DNA of 64,000 nt from Zygnema circumcarinatum SAG 698-1b (Eukaryota; Plantae; Zygnematophyceae), in the NCBI GenBank assembly GCA_037447605.1, contig CM074805.1:1149361-1213360 (forward strand), given 5' to 3'. Within the stretch, counting starts at the first letter, position 1. Every line of letters begins with the position of its first letter. The notes under the pieces are model-generated. The model saw only the letters and a list, made by a program, of their open reading frames with translations. It was not told the origin of the DNA and searched no databases. Both the position numbers and the translations under genes were made by a program. Positions 1-45,405 of the stretch are shown piece by piece.

Positions 1-179
1 AGATTGAAAGTTTCTGCTTCTTTGCTTCGAACTGGTTAGGAACTTTGGATTCTCCCGTGTCTGAGGCAGGAATCAAGTTCTCATCAATTATAGAAAGGAT
101 GTCCATGGAAATGAACATAAAAGTACTGCTGAGGAACAGCGTATTGGCCGCTTATAAACAATCGTTGTTCTACCAACAG

Positions 180-3100
180 AGTATCGAGGAAAACACCCCA
201 GCTCGTCGAGGACATGTTTCAAGATGGCCCTGTGAAAGCAGCTTTGCGATCCTTACACAAGCAAAAGAAACCAGATTTGCTTGAAGAGATTCGGAATCTA
301 GTGATATTGTTGAACGAAAGCCAAGGCCCGCTGCGTAGGTGAGGACGGCCTTGCTTTGCTGCCTCGTTTCTGAATAGACAGCAAATTTCTAGATGTGCGT
401 GTATTGGTCCTACGCTTTAAAGAAGACCCGAGTCCCTCATCCAACTACTGCGCTCTGTTTTTTTCCAAAAAGGCAATAACCGACGGCCTTGAACTGCGCG
501 TTGTGACTTGGGCAGCGTATACTCGTTTCTTTTGTCGAAAGTTACCATCAACGGGCGAGACGCCACTTGTGCCAGGGAGAAGTGGGTGGATTTTACAAGC
601 GGACTCACTACAAGTCACAATCATGTCAGCTTCTATGCAAGATTGGAGGATCCTTCGTCTGAAGCTGTAAGCGTCCAAAATTTTTTCCCTGCTATTAAGA
701 AATCGGTATAAACCAACTTTTCTAAATTTGCATCAAGACGAGGTTGATTCCTTTTTAATAAAAAACACGTCTTTTTATTCTTGCAGGCTGACGACGGAGC
801 TTCATTAATTGACATTCCTTACTACCAAATTCATCAGATTGGCAGTAAGCTTTGACCTTACAAAAAGAAAATAGAAAGGACTGCAGTCATTGAGATATTG
901 GACAATCCTGGTAGCGAGTTGTCCTTAAGCAGGCTGCATCTATTGATGAGTGATCTATGAATTTATTTTGCATTTGACAGTCAACTGTTATTTCCTCCAA
1001 AGAAATCATGACTGTGACCTACATGAGTAACTGCCGCCTGGGAGCTGAAACTACTCAGCACAAATATGACTGATTTGCGGTTCTCGTTTTGATAAGCCTT
1101 GACATTGTTGCCAACAACATTTTTTCTGACGGTAACTCGTTTTTGCCACAGGATATTCAACTCGGAATTTAGAAATTGTGACCTACGAGCCCATTCTCGA
1201 CGAGTTGACTTCAAGGGTACGCACGCAGAATAGTCTTGATCCTGTCTTATACTTTCTGGACACGAGACCTCTCGTTTCACTTGTCTTGTTTTCTTTGTTA
1301 CTACTACTGAATTTGTTTTAGAAACTGAAACATGCTAAGCTGACAGTACGAGACCTTCCGTCTGAGTACAGGCCCCTGCTAATGACAAAACTGAAATCCA
1401 CATCTTGATGGAGTTTGCTACTGAAGGTATGGCGGAACATCGGTGAAGCTGATTGCCATTTGAAAATAGAAGTCGTTTTAAGATGTAGGTTGGATTTTTC
1501 TGCTCAAGCACACTAGCAACATTCCCGTTAAACAGTCTGGTATCCGGCACTGATTCGTTCACAGTTTTTTCAATTTGCAGATTTAAAAATTATCGAAAGC
1601 CGCCTACTTTGCCGAATCAAGAACCAAATGCGTCAGGTGTGGCATCACATCCCAGGTGCTGTCCTTAGGACAAGTTGCCCTTTTGGGTTACCTTGAATCT
1701 CAAAGATCCGAAATGATCATGCCTGTTCAATGACGTCGGTTCCCCTGGATTGTGTACAGATTAACGATATTAATTCATCTCAGAAAGGTTCATTAAATTC
1801 CTCAGAAACAGGAGGTTCTGATAGGCCTACGAGGAAAGCGTCCATTGGCATCATGCCGGACTTCAACAGAAGTTATCCAAGGCCCCAGCAAGTACAGAAT
1901 ACGCCTCAAGCCACAGCGACACAGGCTGTCAATTTGGGTTACCCAGTGCCAAAAACACGCAATGCTAAAGCTGGAACAAATACCGATGTGGAAAACGGCA
2001 CAGGCACCATACGAGAAATTAATCAAGATATAGAAAGCTGGGAGGCAATCTTCACAAGTCAACCTATTCCCCTGCAGAACAACAAAAGCTCCCCTAAGAA
2101 ATTTCGTGAAGAGGATAAAAGGAGCAACAGCGGGGTGGACATACTGTCCAGTTTGGATGCTGGGGTTGGGCCAATTTCCCAGACGCATCTGACGATGGCT
2201 ACACAGAATGTCATAAGCGAAACATACCGGGAAACGAAGAAAGTGACTACAGAAGCTGCCACGTCTAACGAACAAAGTCTCCCCTCTGACATTCAGGAGG
2301 AATTAACTCTGTCGATCCTTGTAAGGTCCAAGACCCAAGTTCCTTCAGGCATAATCGTCAAAAGAGATCAAGATTTTAGCATGCGAGACAGCGACACTCA
2401 TGAAGTTGCTGGAATAGCTCCCACTGTACGCGGAAACTCCGATGCAACAGGAGCATCGGGAGAGGAGAATGTTCCGAACATCTTTGACGATGCAGTGGAG
2501 CCTCCGGAACAAGCAGTGGGGACGGAGGTTGGAAAAATTGATCAGGCTTCCTCTCCAAGTACCCACATCAAAGAGCAAGCCAAGGAGAACTCTGTGAAGA
2601 AGACTAACGACTTAAAGAAACGGTTGGAAGGAATGGGGCCTTCTTCTGGTTCTCCTGCTCCCTTCCAAACGGATAAGGAAGATGCTATTGTTAGGAAGAA
2701 TGCTAACGATTGTTCCCGCCAGCTGGGTGAGCAGCAGTTGAATCAGATTAACAAACGTCCAAGAAGACGTGCGTCTGCACTATCAACGAAGCCTCTGACT
2801 TCAGTGAAGGAAAATGAAAAGCTTACGAACGTGATCCAGAATGATCCAAAGCAAAGGCCAGTCGACGGGCCTCCTCCAGAGGAAGGAAAAAGAAATGACA
2901 AAGGAGAGTCCAGGCACGAGGAGAAACAGGAGCAGGCTTGTTCAGAAAAACCAGGCAGGGCAGTGGACTCATCAAAGGGGCGTCTCAACAATTCTAATGT
3001 TGAGAAAAAGAGGAAATCGCCTCCGGCCTCTCAGGCACCTTCTCCTCCTGTCCCTTCTGTTCAGCGGGTTGGCAGAAACAAGTCACGCATTGTCCGTGAA

Positions 3101-6100
3101 GGACAAAAGGGAAATCCTAGAAGAAGAGCGAGGCCAAGCGAAGGGAACAGTTTCGTTGAAGTGCCAGTGAAGGAACCAATTCCAAATACATCCGAGACAG
3201 ACAACCCAAAAGCAGGCTTAACCCTTAACCCAGTCAGTGAAGAAACGCTACTTTTGAAGGAGCCTCAGAAAAGGCTTCGGGAGATATTCCAATCTGAGCC
3301 GACCCCTGATGCCACCTTTGAGAATTTGAGACGTCAATCAGCACATACTGAGGACCCCATTGAAACCGACAGTGAGGATCGAGATCAGGTTCTTCAAAAA
3401 AGTCCAGTCTTGAAGGCACGAAGAAGATGCAGTAAACCAAAGCAGGGGACGAAAAGTACACAAGGGGAAGACGAGAGAAACGATGTCATTAAGCGTAGAG
3501 TCTCGGCCCACACTCGGAGGAAAGGCTTGATTGGAAAGAAAGCGCTTAACAACACCAATCAGACTTTCTGTGACGCTGTTGACAACTGTGCTTCTCCGGA
3601 AATGGGTCGGTCAGAGTTTGCCTCGGTATTCATCAGTACACCTATAGTCACAAAGCCTGCTCCACAGCTTGAAACACCTCCATGGCAGCTGGAGGAGGGA
3701 AAAACAAAGCAAGGCGAAAGCAATGATGAGGATGAGAAAGAAAATCACTCAGATCAGCTGCTTGTAGTACCGTCTCCAGAGCTCAGAACTCCCCAGGCCC
3801 CTCTTTCTCCAGTAGGTTACGTGCCAGAAAATGAATTGAATGATCGATCGCTGTCTTCCCCGGAAAAAGAAGGTATGTAATCATTCTCTGATCTGAAGCC
3901 TGAACAGTCAGAACCAGCTTCTCCTTTCCGTCAAATGGGTGATTGTAACTTGGTGACCTGGTGAGTGTCGCTCAAAACATATTTTCCTGTCAACATAATA
4001 CTCAAACAAAAGGTGTTCAATTGTGGAGAGTGGAGATAAGGTCCACTCACGAGTTGTGCCCTCCGAATAGGCTGAATATTTTGCTGCTGATTCCCGGCGG
4101 GCATACGGATTGTGCTGTTTTTGCGGATGCTTTTTTTTTTTATATTTTGTCATATCGTTGAGATCGATGAGGTGCACTTTAGATTTCAAAAGAGATAACA
4201 GATTGCTGGTCTCAGCAGCGTAATGCAACAGAGGTTCTTCGTCATGACTTGCAGTACCGGAGCAAGCCAGTAGAAGGAAGCCGAGGGCAATCAAGCGAAT
4301 GGAAGGTATGACTGCCAAATGTCGTGGATGGAAGCCCCTGCAACTCTCTCCACCTTCATCGCCACAATTAACGCCTGGTAATTTGTCCAAGACTGTCCCA
4401 ATGTCCATTTTTTAGAAGTTGTCAGGAATCCATTCTTGTCTTTGAAAGGAAAGTTGCAGTGCTCACTTGATCAACAAAATTCAAGCAAATGGTACACAAG
4501 TTGCACGCTTGACCAATAAATCAGCTTTGGGTGGAAAACATGCAGAGCCTCCCAAGCGGAAGGGGTCTAGAAGGAGGAGGCCACAACTGAAAGCGAAAGA
4601 TAGGATAGATGAAGGTTTTGGCCATCCAGACAGCCCAGGTCTAAGGCAGGTCTCTCTGTCAAGAGGTACGGGATACATCACCTTAAGCCAGCAAGTCGTG
4701 AATAACGGACAGAATAGCGCCCGTTTGCCTGAAGTCAAATGTACGCTCACAAACTTATCCATTCATCAGCTGTACATATTTTGCACTTTGAGTGCTTTGT
4801 TAGTCACGACAATTCTTACATCCAGAAAGTGGTTTCACTTTGGACGTTACTCCAGAAGAGCATTGGTCCCGGGCTTGACGTTCCCTCTTTGCAGCAGGAA
4901 ACAAATCAGGTGTTGAAGTCGACTCCAACGACGACACAGGAGGCTTTCACGGGTATGTTGACCATCTGAAGACTGCATTGTCAGCGCTGGACCTGAGGTT
5001 AAATTTTTTAATAAATTTCGCTCGAAATGGACTAAATTTTTTATATCGAACTTGCAGAGCTGTCAATACGGTGGCCAAGATGCTCAAGAAGCTCAAAGGA
5101 AAGGTGCAAGCCAAGACAAAACAGAAAACTTTGGACATTCTTCAAGAAACTGACAAGAGCATACGACATGAGATCGTCACGGTTGAAACCGAGGTCACCA
5201 GAAGTATGTAAGTTTTTCTAATCGAGACAAATTATGAATTGGAATTCAAATCTAACTTGAACTCAAAATAGAAATCGAATCCACCGAGGTCCAGTCAGTA
5301 TTAACTTAATCTTAACAATGTGTAAGTCTGCTTTTGGCTCGCATTCTCTAAAAGGTGGCTGTCTCCCAAATTTGTCAACAACAAGAGAAAATCGAAAATC
5401 TACCACTCGCTTTAACTTCTTTGCAAAGGTTTAGAAGCTGCATCACGAGCCTGTTTGTTGGAAGTCATTCTGAAGAAATTGATGTTACTTACACGCTTTA
5501 GCCTCAAATGCGCTTGACAGTGAAAAGTGTATGTCTCTCGGGAAGAGGAAGACCAGAGAGATTGAAGAAAGCCTGTGTGGTAAGTTGTTTCTTTCGAAAC
5601 TTTCACATGCTTTAGGATCCCTCCTGTTGTTCTCGACGGTGTTTATTTTCTTCAAGTTTAATGGGGTATTTAATGCTGGTTGCTTGTAATCGTTAGGGCA
5701 ATGGCATAAAGGAATCATAACGTATTTGTGTACTGACAGTAGCACCCCTAGGAGTCGTAAGAAATTGAAGTGACAGCTCATCGTTTACCACGATTTTTCA
5801 CCTCCTTGTGCTCTTCTGCCTTCGTTCTTGCAGCTCAAACCAAGAAGGTCAAGGCCACTTACGAGTCGTTTGTGAAAGATTTCGCGGAGCATGTCGGCGA
5901 GTACAACAGACTATTTGCAGAAGTGGACGACACCGAACTCGAGCTGAAGACACAATTTGAACATCAGAGTGAGTAGCAAACCAATCCATGTTCCTGGTGC
6001 GCCTCTGACTAAGGTGGTATGTTTTTGTTTCCGTTCTCCTGATCAGAATGTCGATAATTCTCTCGCGTAGGTCTCTTGCAACGTTTGGCAACACTCACGA

Positions 6101-6494
6101 TATCTCAATTTGGAAGAGGTAGTTCCCTCGCTTACTAGTCACTGAGGTAGCTCTTTCATGCTCGAGTGCAGGGGCAGCCCACCAGGAAATGCTAGCACAG
6201 GCCAAGAAGGCCACTACAGCGTGCTTGGCAGAAGCGGAGAGCAGACTTTTGGTGGTGCAAAAGGTTCGTTGACTGCGGCCTCCTTTTCAGTTTGTAGTCT
6301 GGGGGCGCACTTCCATCTCTGGCAGGAGCAGTACCTCATGGCGTCTTTGCCATAATTCTTTCGGGAGGGTTACTGGTTTGCAATGTAATACTCAAGTTCA
6401 CTGTCGGCGTCTGACCATGCAGAGTGAGTTAACAATGAGAGGACTCCGAGCGGCACTGCAAGACGCCCTTCAAGAAGTTCTCGGATCTCCGTGA
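180..6494 (+). CDS. ASY3: Meiotic chromosome axis core protein, ASY3/PAIR3-SYCP2-Red1 family (5' end outside window, multi-exon)
   Basis: Exons 180-338, 516-666 and 787-844 splice in frame to give ..DLLEEIRNLVILLNESQGPLRSVYSFLLSKVTING..EKWVDF..HVSFY.., resembling the SYCP2 ARM/PH region. The long exon to 3872 is disordered and contains RKASIGIMPD, matching the ASY3 closure motif. Terminal exons (5059-5208, ~5520-5580, ~5834-5969, ~6181-6263, 6423-6494) give DLRRAVNTVAKMLKKLKGKVQAKTKQKTLDIL..KCMSLGKRKTREIEESL..RAAHQEMLAQAKK..SELTMRGLRAALQDALQEVLGSP*, collinear with the ASY3 coiled coil as I recall it. Middle exons (3.9-5.0 kb) are approximate. Confidence 0.85.
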
Positions 6495-10200: not shown

Positions 10201-13200
10201 AACCAGTGCGCATTTCGTCTTTTGGAAGCGACAAAATGGGCGGCATTGTGAAATCAGTGGATGCAAAGCTAACAATGTGTGACGCCAATGCGGAAAGTCT
10301 CGTTTGAAGAGTTGAGTAGTCCCAGCCGCTTAGTAAAATTGCCGTGTTTTCAGAGGTACTCATTTGAGCGCCCATTCCCAACTTCACATTTCTGGACAGC
10401 CAGAGCAGAGCAGGAGGGGTGGAAGTAAGATGGGGGGAACTGGCCTTTCGAGAGTTCAAAACACAGGATTTGCAAAGCATTCTTGGATTGTAACGTATCT
10501 TCAATGAAAGAAGTGTCAAAATGTGGAGATGGATGCAAGCAGTCACTGCAATGGCACCTTCACCTGGCTCAGCTTCAGAGATCTGTACCTGCTCTCTAAA
10601 GCAAGCAACCCCACTAGGGCTGACACAATGTGCCTCTAAACTAATCTCACAAGCTAATGTGCTACAAGGGGAAACACCACCAAAAGATTGTTCAAAAAAA
10701 CCCAACAGTCAACCTCACTTGAAGATTCACCTAAGCAGCTGAGCATGCGCCATAATTTCCTCCTCCCATGTGTTGCCCTCCATCGAAGCCCTTGCTGCAC
10801 CCTGTGTCTCCATCAGGAGAGTGTCATTCGTGAGAAGACGGAGCACTGTTGAGGTGAGTGCTGCCTGATCCAAACGACGCTCCCCCACAAACGGTACAGT
10901 CCAGCAAGGGGGGGCTCTGCAGGGAGACAGCAACACAAGAAAGATTGCATAATGCGACAATAAAGCTATATGCAGATGATTACACGGAAAGTACACAGGG
11001 CAAGTAAAGAACTTCAGGCTATTTCCCGCCACACTTGAAAACTTATGAGAACAGACCTGATCTCGCGACTGTTAGTGCCAATACCGTCTCGTGAAAGCGA
11101 GGTGTCCGTTTCTCTCCCCAAAGTAGGTGCATTGGGGTTGCAAATGCATTCCTGCCATCACAATAACTCGCACAGAATTCATGCACCGGATATGTCCCAT
11201 ATGACGTTCAACGACACAAGAAATCCTACAACCTGCTCAAAATACTTTTTGTGGCAAAGAAGACTCGGACTGCCACCACTGGACTTTACACAAATGCTGT
11301 ATTGACTCCTTGGAGCTGACAAATGAGATGTGGAGAGCATGAATACAACGAAATTGTTAGCATTCTTCAGCATATTAGCATTTAGGGACTGTCGTTCTGA
11401 TGTATGGCTGCACTTTCAACATATTTTTGCTGGTTCCTTCAATTCAGGACCGCAATTTCAGCAATTTAAAATTGATCTGACAATCAATTATAGAAAATGC
11501 CGAAACTGCGATGAAAAAACAGCGAGAATATGCTGAAAATGCAGCCATACATTGGAAAAACAGTCTAAAAATGCTGATAGCCCCCGATTGGAATAACCAA
11601 AAGTGAACTGAAAATCCAATGTACCCTCCAAGTTCAACCTGCACTTTCCTACAACTTCGCTTATGCATGCCCAGGCCAGACCTTCAACATCCCTTCCAGA
11701 CTGCTCTCCACTGTGCCTTTATGATGCCATGGAGAGACTAATAATTGCAAGAAAGGGCGGTATCAGCCGCTATTGATCTTCACGACAGAAAATGGGGTGG
11801 GACCTCACCTCGGCAAAGCGAAAGGACGATGCGACGACCGCTTTTCCAAATCCCATGGCCATGCTTATGATTCCTGAAGAGATCTGTTACAGTCACAACA
11901 CCAACAACCAAGTCATGCACAAAACAAGTTTTTCCTTGACTCTGGCTTATCGAGTTGCCACATCTCGTTCCTTGAAAGGGGCTTTGCTATAATTCTTACG
12001 AATTGCAAAGAATCAAGGTAGGAGGGATTGTCTAGTGCTCCAGGTATTGTAAAATGTAAAGGCATGCGAAAAGGGCTTTAATACCAGCTCTTTTCTCTTT
12101 CCCTTTCTCCTTCTTTTTTCATTCTGTCCCTGTCATGAACAAGCCTTCAGAAGAGAGAGCAGGATTCACCTGCTGCTTCTGGAGGTTTGTCACAACGACA
12201 ATCTCTGCCACTTGCATCCACTCCAGAAGTTCCGATTTCAACAAATTCTGCCCCTTGACAAACACCACACTACTGTGCAGATGCAGGTGGTCCACTAAGG
12301 TCTCCAGTTCACTCAAGTAGTCGCTTTGCAGGCCGGGCTGCTGCCCCCCAGCAATGACATAAAGGGCATCGGGGACTTCTACAGACACCTGCACCATAGA
12401 CTTGATCATGTACTCAAAGCCTTTGTCAGAGCTGATAAGCCCCGTGCTGAGGATGACTCGGCGTCCATCCAAGACAGAGGCGAAGTCGCGGCGGATGTGA
12501 ATGGCTGCTGGAGGAGAGCGCTCAAACCCATAGGGGATGTGGCTGCCAATACATAGAGTGTCAAGTTCAGGACAGTCTACGGCAAGGCATGATGGAAGTG
12601 AATCGGATGAGCAGTACAAATCATGGAAGCAGTACAGCCTGGCTCTCTCCTGAACTGGCCATTCTAATCTTCCTGCTACAGCTGCAGTATTTATGTTGCA
12701 TATTGTAGGAGCGCAAAAGAAAGAAAAAGGATTTTCATCACAGCTGGAAAGTGAAGAATTCAACAAAAAAAGCAGCGAGTCAACGTCAGTCTTATCAAGT
12801 AGCATGTGAGAGCAGCAAACCTGCATTGGAGCCCGGGCATAAGGGCCTGAATCTCAGAGCAGACACTGGGAACAAAGGTAGTCACCAGATTGACTCGCTT
12901 TAAGATCTCACGCAGGCGGACACGAACGGTCAAGTTGGTGGAATCGCCTATCAGCGTGTGAAAGCAAACCTGCACTGGTACTCTGCGTTCCCCACAGGTT
13001 GCCACCTGTCATCCTCACGCCCGCACTTGCAAGTCAAGTCGTATGAAAGGATAGTACATACTCCTTACTAGAAAAGACCTAGGTTAAGTCTTCAAGGGTG
13101 GGAATTCGACTGACTCTCTACAGGAAAAGCTGCCAATAAATCGGCCCTGTTCTGGAACCGATCGATACTGAACGGAAGCTCCACAAGGAAACGAATTGAG

Positions 13201-30100: not shown

Positions 30101-33100
30101 GGAGAACTGCACTAAGAGTCAAGAGCTTCGCTTGTCAAGATTTCAGAGCCGAATTACAAAGTGGTGAGGGTGAAAAAACGGAACGACGAATAGAAATTGG
30201 GAAGGTGATATGCATATGCCCACCTTGATAGTGGAGTCTAACAACGCCACTGCGATGTACTTCCCATCGGGGCTGAAACGCACACTCAGCACATCCTCTG
30301 TCATCTTCAGAGTACGCGTGTGTGCCACTGTGAATTGCTTGGCTGCCTGTAAGCATTAGCGTTAGTGACCAGTTAGTTTTAAGCTGTGACTAAAGGATCC
30401 ATACAAGGTTGCTGCTTGGAGACTGAGCAGCGCCTTCTAAAGGGTAGGAAAGGCTTTTCTTGTGGAGGTGAACTCACTGAGCTATCGCCGATTGCAACCT
30501 CATATTCCCAAAACTGCACATCCCTTGAGCCCCTCAAGAAAGGCATGTCAATGGGGCCCATATGAGAGTATACGACACCAATTTGTGAGTCATTCCTATA
30601 GTCGACCATGAACAAAAAAATTAGCATCTCGAATGGCGGTGAGAAGTCAACAAGTCAACGGTGGTTAATTCATCTCCTGCAATCTAAACGCATATACATC
30701 AGAAATCGACAATAGTAAGTCTGAGACCCACGAGAAAAGCCTAGAGAGCACCAACAGCCCGGAAAAAAACGCAAAATAGTGAGGGGATGTTAGGAGCAAC
30801 AACGACAGCTGTGAATACAACTCTAGCATTCGAATGTATTCAGCTACATCAGGCGTTTTGGGGGACTCCCAGCGGAATCCCTTCCCTTCCGCATAGCTCA
30901 CTGCCCAAAGTGGCAAAGGATAGAGAAAAGGCAAAGAGCAGCCCACCTTCACATGATGGTCTGCGCTGGCAGTGGCGAATCCCGACCCGTCGGGCAGTGC
31001 GGCAATGCCCCAAATGGCTCCCTCGTGGGCGGCTAAAACCTCCACGCGCTGAGCCCCTCCCACATCAAAGAGCTCCAAGGTGCCCTCTTTCGTCCCTACC
31101 ACCGCCTGTCCGCGGAACAATGTGTTTCGCACACAGGTGGGGACAACATATATATATACGTCAGCTGCTGTTCAGACCACATGTGAGATAATAAGCCGAT
31201 ACAAGCGCATCCTTACACAACGCAAGGGGGTCAACCTATGATCAAGCATTCGACATAACTATGCATACCAGAGAGAGCGCAAGAACACGGATAAATCCCA
31301 GGCCAACAAAGAGCTTGCACGCCCACGTTCACGCCTGAGAAAGTTTCTCAAGTCTCGTTGTGCTTTCCGACTGCTGACCCTTGAATCATAGAGCTCTCAG
31401 AGTCCCAAGTTCGCCTGCTGCAATTCCACCAACTTGCAGTGCTGGAAATTAAGAAGAAAGAGACAGACCTGCCGGTTTGAAGGGGCGAAGAGTCCGCATA
31501 GGCTGTACCCCGATTCCACCGTTCGCAAGCAGACTCCTTTATGGGGGTTCCAAATCTGCATGCACCCAAGCGCCGACTCAAATAGTGCTCAAATGATCCA
31601 ATTGCTTTGCAAGGTAGTCTTCAGCATGCCTCCGATAGAACAATAGTCATTCGAGCTGCAGTCACATTAGGTTTGCTGAAGTTAAATGGAGCCTCGTGCT
31701 TCTCGTTTCCGACCTGTCTTTCTCAGAGCGCTCTATGAAAGAGAGTTGAAAGCCGAAGAAGTTGTGACAGTAGACGGATTCTCACCTTGACGGAATTGTG
31801 AGAGCAGGAGAGGAGAAGGGAAGCGTCCGAACTGAGTGCTACTGCACGCACATCGGAACTGTGGCCCGGTAGATTGATTACATGTGTTCTCTCTGCAGTA
31901 GCTTCATGCACGTCATGGACCTGCCAAAAGCAACTTGAGACCAGCAGTCAAACACTGTTAGGAACACCCGACATTTTTCACTACAAACTTGAAGCGATCG
32001 ATGTCTGCAATGAGGGTTCCCATTAGACTGTCGGCTGCTTGGTTTCTATGTCAACCACCTTGATTCTTCTAGTTGTTCCCTTTCGATTTAGTAATGCCCT
32101 TTAAAGAAAATCCGGAGGTACAACTGACAGAAAGAAAAACTAATGTGACCGGTGGTTATTGTCCAAGAAAAAGCAGCCTCCTTTCACATGCTGTGCGAAG
32201 TCATGGTCACTAGCAGTGGGAAAATTTCACCTCCAAAGAGTTATTGTGCAGAGCCAACGCAACCACAGCTTCTATCCCTTTCTTCGGAGGTGCCTCGGAG
32301 AAGGCAAATGAACGAATTTTCTGTTTTGTCCGCAGCACCTGCATGAGAAAAGACGCTCCTGAGAGTCTGACACCTACGACAAAGGGGCTTCCTATAAAGC
32401 ATGTCTCCCCCAGCGTAAGTTTGTCCCTGACGATTCCACTCAAAATTATATGGTTACCTTCCTTCTGCAGCCACCTCTGTCACTAACTAAGCTGTATTAT
32501 AGAGAGATAACCATCAGTGGATTTTCCATCCCAATGACCTCGTTGTTTACATTGCAAGGAAAAACCATGCAACAATGCACCTCCATAGAAGCCAGTCAGG
32601 GCCGAGGTAAGCAGGCAACTCAGCAGTATCAGACTATCCATAAAAAGGACACCGTCCTGTGTTAAGATAGCACAGCCAATGTAAGATGCCAAAGGCCAGC
32701 ATAGAAAGCTGCTTGACCTGAACTTTCAGGATTTTGTTTTGGGCTACTTGTAAAATATTGCAAAGACTAGTGAACTCAATGACGGAATATCTTTAGGTTA
32801 ACGTTGGACAACCTACCTGAAGGAGGCTTAGCTCGTCAGTCGCAACAATGGAATTGGAGTCCTCCTCAGCAACCTCATCCACTGCGGTGTCAACAGCATC
32901 TGCAGCACCTGTTTTTCGAGCCTTCTCTTTTTTTCGAAGTTTACGCCGTTTTGCATGCTTCAGTGCCTCTTTGGCAGCTCTCACCCTGCCATTGCGACGG
33001 ACAGAGTCCTTAATATTTCATGGCCCCATCCTATGATCACCAATACTTTCCCTTGCAACAGACATCAAGCAGACCTCGCCTTAGAAACCTTAAGGACAAC

Positions 33101-35140
33101 GGCGGGCATCACACGAAGAGCCATATTCAAAAGAGAGGAATGGCCACCTGGCTCACCGAAAAATCTCCAGGGTCTTTCCAGCCGCTTGACAACCTAGTAG
33201 AGTTCCACCAGAGTTGAAGCGCAAAGTCACTACCCTATCACTGCTTTGCCGTTGAATGCTTCCCATTGGGCTCAATATGTCCCACTGCTTCTCCCCCTCT
33301 TGCTCCGCCCCGTCACTTTTCTGCAACTCTGCACTGACACCAACTACTGCCTTCCCTTGCTCTTTAGCACCCTCATTCCCTCCAATCTGAAAGACGCGCA
33401 GTTCTGCATCAGCAGCACCAGTTATAAGGCGCTCTTCAGAGGGGTCCACATCCAGGCTCCAAACTTCACAGCGGTGTCCAACAAGTGTCTGCAGACAATG
33501 CTGGGTGTCTAAGTCCCATACGCGCACAAACGAGTCCTTGGAACTGCTAACCAACCAGTGGCCACGCTCTATGAAGACAACGTCTGTCACCTGCACTCCC
33601 CCACCCCATTCATCCGCCATAGCTAATAAGCTTCAGCCATTCGAACACTTCAGCGCTGCAGTCTAAATTTCTTTTCAAAACAATGCTAGAAAAATGTTGG
33701 AGGCGATTCAGGCGCGTTCCTTTCGTTCAAATATTGGTAATGACAAATTTAGTCAACCACCTGTCATTGAAATCCTAAGGTCCACCTCCATATTCCCACG
33801 TTTGAAGTCCCTACTTTCTGCTTGTGGACAGCATTCATACGGTTTTTTAAACTCGTACACAGCCCACAATTTACAATCATAAAAATTGCCCCGAATTTTG
33901 AAAAAGAATAAAATCGCCGGGTGATAGGGCTTCACAAACGAATCTACGAATTTCACAATATTGATGTTTCCCTTCCTGTTCTAAGTATACTTGAGAAAAG
34001 CTATGCAAAGACGAAATCCCAACTTATCTACGTCGTCTCCACAAGCTTTATGTAGTAAACCTAAAGAAATTTAAGTGAACCTGTCTTCAAGCCGCTACAA
34101 GAAAAGATCACTGTAGAGTTCATGGTATCAGATGGGTTTGGCCCTTGTGAAGATTAGAAATTTGCTACACTACTTTCTCCTTCAGCAATTTGCGGTACGT
34201 GTTACACTTATCTAATTTAACCACAGTTTTGCAGCCCCGCATTTTGACATCATTGTTTTGTGTTGCTCCAACTTCGAAACGCACACTAACTTCTTGGACC
34301 GGCTGATTTTTGGTGGAAGCATGTTCCACAACAATGATGAGTGCAGCAAAAGCGAAACATCCCAAGTGCTAAAAAAGTAGCAGCATGAAGCTTGTAAGGC
34401 AAATCTTCTTCATGATAGTGGTGGTTTCTGTGCATGGCTTGAACTGCAAACTGGCAGAGGTGACAGACTTGCCGGCCCACGGTGCCCCTTAAGGCGGTAG
34501 AGGCCCATCTCTCCCACCACGTCCCACACAATGACATCTGTGTCTTTCCCGCCGGATGCAAGGAGTCCACCTCCTTGGTTAAACCGCAATGCAGAAACGC
34601 CCGACTTGTGCCCGTTCAGCTGCACATCGCAGATGCCCTTTTCATAATCCCACAGGCGGATAGAGCCGTTCGAGTACCCCACTGCCACCTGCACAAAGGA
34701 AAGCCGCACTCAATACAAACAAACATGTTCGTCTCAAGCAGTTGAACGTCCTCCAGCCTAAAAAAGAAGCCACCTCGAAAAATTACATCATGAAAGCCTA
34801 ATAACAATGCCCTTTTCCTCGTCCACGCCCCCCCAACTGTCCTCATCCAAAGAGCTCAGAATCGAGAAAGGTCGAGCACCAGCGAGGAGTGCGTGGGGCT
34901 CCGCGCCATGGCGGTCACTTCCGGCGCAGCCCCTTCCCCCCCCAGGCCCGCCCCCGCCACCCCCGCCGCCGGCTCCAGCACGTGCTGCGCGGCGCCCTGG
35001 CGCACGCTCCACGCCTGCACCCTCTCCAGCGCCGCCGCCAGGAGCAGGCGCCCCGTGGCGTCCCACAGGACGTTGGCGCCCGGGGACGCGACCACGCCAA
35101 ACGTCCCCGCGAGCTCGTACCGCAGGTACGTCTTCACCAT
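27179..35140 (-). CDS. WDR3: WD40 SSU-processome protein WDR3/UTP12/DIP2
   Basis: MVKTYLRYE.., repeated GH..WD motifs ([42 protein letters not shown]), EEREKRLE and the Utp12 C-terminal domain ([36 protein letters not shown]). All junctions could be spliced in phase; intron 2 needs a GC donor. Confidence 0.97.
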
Positions 35141-44218: not shown

Positions 44219-45405
44219 TCATGCACTCGATCCCGTGGAGAGACCCAACCATCCTCTATCAATGTTTTGCCAATTCTCTCTCCCCGCTCCTACTAGGCTA
44301 GGCTCTACTATGGGCGGAGATAAATCTAGCCAGGGGAGGTTCGGCGTCTGAGTGCCACTTGTCCCCTCAGCGACTCTCTCTGAATACCCGGATTTCGGCA
44401 TTTCCTGGTAACTGAGCTCACTTCCGTCAAACTGCGACGACCTGCATGCCTCCTCAGCTCTCGCCCCGCTTTGAAACCTTTCCAAAGAATAGGTGTTACA
44501 AGCTTCAGCAAGTATGTCCGCACTGAGTCGGGGAAATCCTATACTCGCCATCGAGCGAAGGAGGACGTCTTCGTGTGATGTCTTGGTGGGTTCTGTGCAA
44601 TCTTCAGCCCCTGAAAGACCCTGCAACTCTTGCTCTTTCGCAAAATGGTGAAGGTCAACATCGAAAGACCTGAATCCGCCGGCCTCATTCGATGCAGTGT
44701 GATCGAATGTTTGATGAGCGAAAGAACCTTCGCCAGAAATGGCATCTGCTGGAGAGTCAGGGTCCACCGCTACATCAGCAGGATGTGCTGTGAGGGCATT
44801 TCCAACTAATCGCAGCGTTGCAGGTTGCAAGGTTCGAGCCATTCGGTGGTTATGCTGCTCCGCATAGACGATACATTTCCTCTGCAGAGTGTCAACGTCA
44901 AAGTCGATTGTGCGTCTTGCTGGGCAGGCACAGCCTTTAAACAAAACACATCTGTAGTAATTTCTGCAAAACACCATAGAAAACACGAGGAGGTAACGTG
45001 AGACAGGAAGCTGCTGCGCATGACAATAGCGCTTGAGTGCGACGCTAGCAACGCATTCACGTCATGATGCGGAAAGGAAGATGGTCTAAAGCTCTGCGTG
45101 GAGACGCGAACACATAAAAGCGGCTCACCTCATAGAATTGGTGCCCTTGATGCGCTTTTGGCCATACTTGTGCCAGAGGTAGCCATCGTTTGGAATTGGC
45201 AGGAGATGGTGAACCCGATGCCTGCACAGACAATTGGTTTCGTGGCTTTAGCTCTATTGTAGAGAAAGACAGCTCCAAAGTAACGTCATTCTGGACATGT
45301 AGTATTGCTTAGATGCCATTATCAGAAGAGATCCGAGCATCCATTTGCAAGTGCATGAGAAGCAGTTTCGGCTCACCGTTTCTGGGGGCTGTCGGGCTCA
45401 TCCAT
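44219..45405 (-). CDS. WRKY-family transcription factor with a variant domain (start codon tentative)
   Basis: Exons 45405-45377, 45221-45129 and 44963-44219 give ..PNDGYLWHKYGQKRIKGTNSMR|NYYRCVLFKGCACPARRTI..YAEQHNH.. followed by an acidic tail. The phase-2 R-type intron is at the conserved WRKY position. An extra upstream exon is possible. Confidence 0.9.

What the first reader, a model, noticed from the sequence alone, without database searches (positions are those of the whole stretch)
180..1700. Plant-lineage ASY3 that still carries the SYCP2/Red1-type N-terminal ARM-PH module
Seen: the spliced exons give EEIRNLVILLNESQGPLRSVYSFLLSKVTINGRDATCAREKWVDFTSGLTTSHNHVSFYARLED. Knowledge: mammalian SYCP2, from memory, reads [48 protein letters not shown] at the ARM-like/PH junction, whereas Arabidopsis ASY3 starts directly at its closure motif and lacks this domain. 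The same gene ends in an ASY3-like coiled coil. Inference: this is an ancestral full-architecture axis protein linking plant ASY3 to SYCP2/Red1, which would place loss of the N-terminal module later in streptophyte evolution. It also implies meiotic capacity.
Basis: partly seen in the sequence, partly recalled or inferred. Interest (0 to 1): 0.8.

Follow-up and report, generated by a model that had tools for sequence, protein, structure and literature searches.

The report
Algal ASY3/SYCP2-type meiotic axis gene
This is an intact, spliced and transcribed gene that looks like the alga's ordinary copy of the meiotic chromosome-axis core protein (ASY3/SYCP2/Red1 type). That plants other than seed plants keep the folded front end of this protein was already published in 2021.

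Summary
Exons 180-338 and 516-666 splice in frame to give exactly the quoted peptide. With 12 further exons they form one open frame of 1132 codons ending at 6272. RNA contigs show 12 of the 13 junctions, including exon 1581-1636 joined to the long exon.

The architecture fits an axis-core protein:
- a folded-looking N-terminal part, about 180 residues in this window;
- a basic-hydrophobic-basic motif;
- about 800 disordered residues;
- a proline-free helical tail of 148 residues.

The fold claim could not be tested properly. No reference exists for a spliced protein, exon pieces hit nothing in Pfam or the PDB, and no homologue was retrievable. Each finds its best match here at colinear positions, but the similarity is only suggestive (E about 0.2 protein against protein), and the 64-residue peptide does not hit 5IWZ. 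The ARM part lies mostly left of the window.

The evolutionary inference is not new. Tromer et al. 2021 state that ASY3 lost ARM-PH in Spermatophyta. The overlapping window of this scan already noted the same stretch (s1-341356).

Verdict: a probable ordinary orthologue and a new member of a known kind. In passing, a spliced antisense RNA covers the gene.

The parts
180..338 (+). Exon a: 52 full codons, helical-looking. It would be the last part of the ARM-like region plus the junction into the beta-rich domain.
   Evidence: AG/GT borders. RNA joint 338>516 in X3. Best local match of 5IWZ 263-284 falls on residues 36-57. Weak Puf/ARM-like repeat similarity to Pumilio 5ykh, E 0.031.
516..666 (+). 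Exon b: first strands of the PH/Spt16M-like candidate domain, including the E-x-W-[IV]-D-F ... S-F-Y block.
   Evidence: RNA joints 338>516 and 666>787. 5IWZ 306-321 has its best match at residues 74-93, reached by 0 of 2000 shuffles. No Pfam or PDB hit on its own.
787..844 (+). Exon c of the PH-like candidate domain.
   Evidence: RNA joints 666>787 and 844>1152 in X2, X3 and X4. Frame kept.
1152..1216 (+). Exon d of the PH-like candidate domain.
   Evidence: RNA joints 844>1152 and 1216>1372. Frame kept.
1372..1426 (+). Exon e of the PH-like candidate domain.
   Evidence: RNA joint 1216>1372 in X2 and X3. The donor at 1426 is canonical, but joint 1426>1581 was not among those listed.
1581..1636 (+). 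Exon f: amphipathic helix that would cap the PH-like domain.
   Evidence: RNA joint 1636>1760 in X1 (record 3, 24 letters on the short side). This 56-nt exon is needed to keep the frame between exons e and g.
1760..3872 (+). Long exon: 704 codons, predicted disordered linker with basic NLS-like clusters.
   Evidence: Open frame. In residues 182-984 (this exon plus the three linker exons), 74% are disorder-promoting and 73 are prolines. Basic clusters. No homologue found in any search.
1823..1882 (+). Closure-motif-like stretch about 20 residues after the PH-like domain: a hydrophobic core flanked by R/K.
   Evidence: Sequence. It fits the verbal description of the AtASY3/ASY1 closure motifs in PMC6349405. 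Its position matches SYCP2 395-414 and Red1 346-362. Binding is untested.
3269..3301 (+). Candidate cohesin (REC8) interaction motif, L-x-E-I-F type.
   Evidence: Resemblance by eye to the Red1 DR3 and AtASY3 180-206 peptides. The pattern occurs once against 0.03 expected, but it was defined after the fact. Local alignments to the two peptides are not significant.
4255..4377 (+). Linker exon, basic.
   Evidence: RNA joints 3872>4255 and 4377>4546 in X2 and X3. Frame kept.
4546..4665 (+). Linker exon with a strong basic cluster.
   Evidence: RNA joints 4377>4546 and 4665>4898. Translation.
4898..4952 (+). Short linker exon.
   Evidence: RNA joints 4665>4898 and 4952>5058.
5058..5207 (+). First exon of the C-terminal helical (coiled-coil candidate) region.
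   Evidence: RNA joints. No proline in the last 148 residues.
5521..5579 (+). Second exon of the C-terminal helical region.
   Evidence: RNA joints 5207>5521 and 5579>5834.
5834..5968 (+). Third exon of the C-terminal helical region.
   Evidence: RNA joint 5579>5834. The loose end at 5969 continues at 6172. Weak match to the dynactin coiled coil.
6172..6272 (+). Last coding exon, with the stop codon at 6270-6272.
   Evidence: The letters of the loose end lie at 6173. Frame and stop.
1500..1691 (-). Intron of a spliced antisense RNA. Further antisense introns lie at 2655-2826 and 4393-4681, and possibly a GC..AG one at 1745-3824.
   Evidence: These joints read CT..AC on the + strand, which is GT..AG on the - strand, in X2, X3 and X4. 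The antisense ORFs have no Pfam family.

Best explanation
The window holds all but the 5' end of the alga's single-copy-looking orthologue of the meiotic axis-core protein family (plant ASY3, animal SYCP2, fungal Red1), in the ancestral full-length form. Shown: it is one 14-exon (in-window) gene, spliced and transcribed, encoding at least 1132 residues. Inferred working, by analogy with the family: (1) the N-terminal folded module (the end of an ARM-like helical region plus a PH/Spt16M-like beta domain, residues 1-181 here) is a docking surface on meiotic chromosomes; (2) the basic-hydrophobic-basic stretch just behind it is the closure motif that captures the HORMA protein ASY1; (3) the roughly 800-residue disordered, NLS-rich linker carries short motifs, possibly a REC8-binding L-x-E-I-F motif; (4) the 148-residue proline-free C-terminal helices pair with ASY4 and polymerise into the axis filament. 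Seed plants later lost part (1), as already published.
For: One gene: canonical splice sites and an unbroken frame over 14 exons to a stop at 6272, with 12 of 13 junctions seen in RNA contigs of four runs. Architecture: more hydrophobic N-terminal 181 residues with an alternating strand-like pattern ending in an amphipathic helix; a middle 803 residues that is 74% disorder-promoting with 73 prolines; a last 148 residues without proline; eight basic clusters. Family link: two verified mouse SYCP2 segments at the ARLD/SLD junction (5IWZ 263-291 and 306-324) each have their best local match in the whole protein at colinear places (residues 36-57, p about 0.03; residues 74-93, 0 of 2000 shuffles). 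The chained score of 48 was reached by 0 of 3000 shuffles. The spacing to the closure-like motif mirrors SYCP2 and Red1. Exon a weakly resembles a helical repeat. Literature: the ARM-PH + closure motif + disordered region + coiled coil architecture is the family rule, and only Spermatophyta ASY3 lost ARM-PH (PMC8131943; 10.64898/2026.01.19.700424; PMC12678776).
Against: There is no significant database match of any kind. Pfam found nothing for any exon piece or for the 64-residue spliced peptide. phmmer against the PDB did not list 5IWZ for exon a, exon b or the spliced peptide, and unrelated chains scored higher. No homologue of the long exon exists in 5.8 billion clusters or 1.84 billion representatives, or in JGI metagenomes. 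A simple heptad-periodicity test of the tail was not significant. The ARM part and the start codon are outside the window. An in-frame ATG at 214 and an unspliced contig over 81-311 leave open a shorter product without ARM. The streptophyte lineage rests on other agents' notes and was not tested here.
Confidence: 0.75

Rival explanations
1. It is an axis-core (ASY3-type) gene, but the in-window N-terminal exons form some other small domain, or the protein starts at the ATG at 214. Under this reading there is no SYCP2-type ARM-PH module.
For: No Pfam or PDB hit for the N-terminal pieces. No RNA joint into position 180 was listed, and an unspliced contig covers 81-311. An in-frame ATG lies at 214.
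Against: A good acceptor sits at 179/180. The colinear similarity to the SYCP2 ARLD/SLD junction is above all shuffles. Non-seed-plant ASY3 is reported to keep ARM-PH (PMC8131943). Run X1 also holds other unspliced contigs, so its read-through says little.
Confidence: 0.12
2. It is an unrelated nuclear protein that happens to combine a small beta-rich domain, a long disordered basic linker and a helical tail. The SYCP2 resemblance is chance.
For: All similarity to the family is below database-wide significance. The motif matches are short and were picked after the fact. The coiled coil could not be compared with ASY3.
Against: The order and spacing of four independent features match the family: folded N-terminal part, motif directly behind it, long disordered region, C-terminal helices of about 150 residues. 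The two SYCP2 blocks fall exactly at the junction before the beta-rich part.
Confidence: 0.1
3. Exons 180-1636 belong to a gene separate from the 1760-3872 exon.
For: Joint 1426>1581 was not listed. A contig of X2 goes 1371-1499 and then 1692-2255 through a CT..AC joint.
Against: Joint 1636>1760 is seen in X1. All phases fit, with no stop over 1132 codons. The CT..AC joint is a canonical intron of the opposite strand, which explains that contig as a sense/antisense merge.
Confidence: 0.03

Closest known systems
SYCP2-type ASY3 homologues of non-seed Archaeplastida (Tromer et al. 2021, PMC8131943)
   Same: The same proposed architecture: ARM-PH N-terminus plus C-terminal coiled coil in a green-lineage axis protein. 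The paper states that only Spermatophyta ASY3 lost ARM-PH.
   Different: No sequence of those homologues could be fetched, so orthology is inferred and not shown. This species' gene was not found in any protein collection searched.
Mouse SYCP2 N-terminal region (PDB 5IWZ; Feng et al. 2017, PMC5498334)
   Same: Colinear blocks at the ARLD/SLD junction: N-L-V ... R-x-V-Y-[ST]-F and E-x-W-[IV]-D-F ... S-F-Y. A closure-type motif follows the domain. [quoted passage not shown]
   Different: Similarity is not significant in a database search. The loop lengths differ. SYCP2 has no detectable REC8-binding motif, whereas this protein has a candidate one.
Arabidopsis thaliana ASY3 (and rice PAIR3)
   Same: [quoted passage not shown]
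   Different: AtASY3 begins at its closure motif (residues 8-35) and has no folded N-terminal domain. Here at least 181 folded-looking residues precede the motif.
Saccharomyces cerevisiae Red1 / Ectocarpus ecRED1
   Same: [quoted passage not shown]
   Different: Red1 forms homotetramers without a short partner. No sequence similarity could be measured beyond a short L-x-x-I-F pattern.

Membership tests
SYCP2-type axis core proteins (SYCP2/Red1/Rec10/ASY3; criteria of Tromer 2021) | N-terminal armadillo-like repeats | not testable with these tools
   Only the last 52 residues before the beta-rich part lie in the window. They give a weak Puf/ARM-like repeat match (5ykh, E 0.031) and a match to 5IWZ 263-284 at p about 0.03. 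The rest lies left of position 1.
SYCP2-type axis core proteins (SYCP2/Red1/Rec10/ASY3; criteria of Tromer 2021) | Complete PH / Spt16M-like domain packed against the ARM repeats | tested here: inconclusive
   Exon pieces and the 64-residue spliced peptide gave no Pfam family and no 5IWZ hit. The colinear motif similarity to 5IWZ 263-324 exceeds all shuffles, but E is about 0.2 pairwise. The whole spliced domain has no reference, so it could not go to a profile or fold tool.
SYCP2-type axis core proteins (SYCP2/Red1/Rec10/ASY3; criteria of Tromer 2021) | C-terminal coiled coil of about 100-175 residues | tested here: inconclusive
   The last 148 residues have no proline. Exon pieces give only weak generic coiled-coil matches. 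The global 3.5-residue periodicity was not above shuffles.
SYCP2-type axis core proteins (SYCP2/Red1/Rec10/ASY3; criteria of Tromer 2021) | Long disordered region between the N-terminal domain and the coiled coil, all on one polypeptide | tested here: met
   The middle 803 residues are 74% disorder-promoting with 73 prolines. There is one unbroken frame, and RNA joints link the parts.
SYCP2-type axis core proteins (SYCP2/Red1/Rec10/ASY3; criteria of Tromer 2021) | HORMAD-binding closure motif directly after the N-terminal domain | tested here: inconclusive
   A basic-hydrophobic-basic stretch at 1823-1882 has the right position and character. No consensus exists to score it against, and binding cannot be tested here.
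SYCP2-type axis core proteins (SYCP2/Red1/Rec10/ASY3; criteria of Tromer 2021) | Short coiled-coil partner (ASY4/SYCP3 type) in the same genome; meiotic expression and axis localisation | not tested
   An earlier unchecked note (s1-350968) reports an ASY4 gene on another piece of this genome. The conditions of the RNA runs are not known to me.
Fungal/plant axis core proteins with a cohesin-interaction motif (Red1 DR3, AtASY3 196-204) | Short hydrophobic motif in the disordered region that binds the REC8 C-terminal winged helix | tested here: inconclusive
   One L-x-E-I-F match lies at 3269-3301, against 0.03 expected for a pattern defined after the fact. Alignments to the published peptides are not significant.
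Seed-plant-type ASY3 (truncated architecture) | Closure motif at the extreme N-terminus, with no folded domain before it | tested here: not met
   At least 181 coding residues in six spliced exons precede the closure-like motif.

The most novel reading that the evidence does not exclude
The axis gene is overlapped along most of its length by a spliced, apparently non-coding antisense RNA, with three or four minus-strand introns between about 1.4 and 4.7 kb. A much more abundant transcript may also start near 4682 and cover only the coiled-coil exons. If the antisense RNA holds the meiotic gene silent in vegetative cells, as in yeasts, or if the short transcript yields an ASY4/SYCP3-like coiled-coil-only product from the same locus, this alga would show how a short axis partner can arise from its long partner, and would show antisense control of a meiotic gene in the plant lineage.
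Probability: 0.15. Interest if true: 0.5.

Novelty: new member of a known kind. Interest (0 to 1): 0.2.

Why it matters
If confirmed, the gene adds one more streptophyte-alga example of the ancestral full-length axis-core protein. It supports retained meiosis in this alga. It would also give a plant-lineage protein in which the N-terminal ARM-PH module, whose binding partner is still unknown in any organism, coexists with a plant/fungal-type cohesin motif, which is useful for comparative biochemistry. It does not change the published picture, in which the ARM-PH loss is placed in seed plants (Tromer et al. 2021).

Tried and rejected
- Pfam on every exon piece of 20 residues or more, and on the 64-residue spliced peptide: nothing relevant.
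- phmmer against PDB sequences with exon a, exon b, two coiled-coil exons and the spliced peptide: no SYCP2, SYCP3 or Red1 hit.
- Long exon against 5.8 billion protein clusters (length window 387-1232 aa only) and against 1.84 billion representatives of any length: 0 hits. No annotated full-length protein or homologue could therefore be obtained for Pfam, AlphaFold or Foldseek.
- JGI metagenome contigs with exon b and with the long exon: none.
- ESM Atlas features with exon b: noise.
- A join-type reference for spliced exons is not accepted.
- No profile libraries exist on the script machine.
- Left out on purpose: handing the whole spliced N-terminus (about 180 residues) to Pfam, the PDB search or structure prediction. 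It has no reference and I did not type it.
- Alignment of the Red1 DR3 and AtASY3 180-206 peptides: not significant.
- Heptad periodicity of the tail: not significant.
- The WRKY hit at 44222-44986(-) was rejected as a lineage marker. Only the zinc-finger half matches, and no WRKYGQK occurs in the window.
- The separate-gene reading was rejected.

Full report
**Observation.** The + strand of 1-6300 holds a multi-exon eukaryotic gene. Canonical AG/GT borders define these exons:
- 180-338, 516-666, 787-844, 1152-1216, 1372-1426, 1581-1636
- the long exon 1760-3872
- 4255-4377, 4546-4665, 4898-4952
- 5058-5207, 5521-5579, 5834-5968, 6172-6272

Joined, they give 1132 codons without a stop, ending at 6270-6272. 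The first base of exon 180-338 completes a split codon, so the gene starts left of the window.

**RNA support.** Six public runs of the same organism hold 0.60-0.71 of the sampled words of 150-3900, close to the exonic share of that stretch. Contigs of four of these runs were laid on 1-6000. They show GT..AG joints at 338>516, 666>787, 844>1152, 1216>1372, 1636>1760, 3872>4255, 4377>4546, 4665>4898, 4952>5058, 5207>5521 and 5579>5834. A loose end at 5969 continues at 6172.
- Only 1426>1581 was not listed; two joints were not shown. That 56-nt exon is needed to keep the frame.
- No joint into position 180 was listed, and a contig of X1 reads through 81-311. X1 also holds other unspliced contigs, so this says little.
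- An ATG at 214 remains a formal alternative start.

**Anatomy.**
- Residues 1-52 look helical.
- Residues 53-181 show six or seven short alternating hydrophobic stretches followed by an amphipathic helix. By inspection this is what a PH-type barrel with its capping helix looks like.
- About 20 residues later, at 1823-1882, a hydrophobic core is bracketed by R/K. This fits the verbal description of the AtASY3 and ASY1 closure motifs and the position of the SYCP2 and Red1 motifs (PMC6349405).
- Residues 182-984 are 74% disorder-promoting, with 73 prolines and six of the protein's eight basic clusters (the other two lie in the tail).
- The last 148 residues contain no proline.
- One L-x-E-I-F stretch at 3269-3301 resembles the cohesin-interaction motifs of Red1 DR3 and AtASY3 196-204. 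The pattern was defined after the fact, and alignments to the published peptides are not significant.

**Test of the SYCP2 link.** They match PDB 5IWZ chain A at 263-291 (E 8e-14, two residues misremembered) and at 306-324 (E 2e-7, one residue).
- Aligned to the whole 1132-residue product, each has its best local match at colinear places: residues 36-57 (score 31, reached by about 3% of shuffles) and residues 74-93 (score 38, 0 of 2000).
- Chained, with the 14 residues between them unknown, the score is 48, reached by 0 of 3000 shuffles.
- By Karlin-Altschul statistics this is E about 0.008 for the 62 residues, 0.2 for whole protein against whole SYCP2, and about 300 for a PDB-wide search.
- phmmer of the 64-residue spliced peptide does not list 5IWZ, while unrelated chains score 12-13 bits.
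- Pfam finds nothing for any exon piece or for that peptide.
- Exon a alone weakly resembles Puf repeats of Pumilio (E 0.031), which is compatible with a helical repeat and nothing more.

**Why a proper profile or fold test was not possible.** The tools take no spliced protein by reference, and I did not type the roughly 180-residue product. The long exon has no match in 5.8 billion clusters (within the tool's length window) or in 1.84 billion representatives. Two metagenome scans found nothing. So no annotated full-length protein or homologue was available to fold or to run against Pfam. The ARM part is almost wholly outside the window.

**Comparison with what is known.**
- Axis core proteins are described as ARM + PH, then a closure motif, then a disordered region, then a coiled coil, with the folded domain 'missing in plant ASY3' (10.64898/2026.01.19.700424; PMC6349405).
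- Tromer et al. 2021 (PMC8131943) used ARM-PH and coiled-coil profiles across eukaryotes. [quoted passage not shown]
- That this genome is a streptophyte alga comes from other agents' notes. I did not test it. The WRKY-like hit in this window is only a zinc-finger half.

**Verdict.** The gene is most likely (0.75) the ordinary full-length ASY3/SYCP2-type axis-core orthologue of this alga. Its PH-like part is plausible but unproven, and its ARM part is unseen. It is a new member of a known kind and of low interest.

**By-product.** Joints reading CT..AC on the + strand are canonical introns of the minus strand: 1500-1691, 2655-2826 and 4393-4681, with a possible GC..AG intron at 1745-3824. They appear in three runs, so a spliced antisense RNA overlaps most of the gene. 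Its ORFs match no family. In X4, a 4.5-kb contig at depth 61 starts near 4682, covers only the coiled-coil exons and runs far beyond the stop. It is either a merge with a downstream transcript or an abundant short transcript.

Noticed in passing
window 1371-4700, minus strand (introns 1500-1691, 2655-2826, 4393-4681; possibly 1745-3824): RNA contigs of X2, X3 and X4 carry joints that are canonical GT..AG introns of the minus strand. A spliced antisense transcript, apparently non-coding, therefore overlaps most of the axis gene.
   Followed up: partly
window 4682-6000 and beyond: In run X4 one 4504-nt contig at depth 61 (other contigs of the gene run at 2-15) begins near 4682 inside an intron. 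It carries the sense joints of the coiled-coil exons and extends about 3.8 kb past the stop at 6272. It is either a merge with a neighbouring transcript or an abundant short transcript covering only the coiled-coil part.
   Followed up: no
window 3269-3301: An L-x-E-I-F stretch in the disordered exon resembles the REC8-binding motifs recently mapped in yeast Red1 (DR3) and Arabidopsis ASY3 (196-204). It is a lead only.
   Followed up: partly
window 44222-44986 (-): This ORF matches only the zinc-finger half of the WRKY domain (E 2e-4). No WRKYGQK-type heptad occurs anywhere in the window. It may be a WRKY/FLYWCH-type finger of another kind, or the first half may lie in a diverged exon.
   Followed up: partly
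window 30668-33620 (-) and 12122-12826 (-): Exons of a WDR3/Utp12-type beta-propeller gene lie at 30668-33620, and a GT4 glycosyltransferase exon lies at 12122-12826. They are ordinary neighbours.
   Followed up: no
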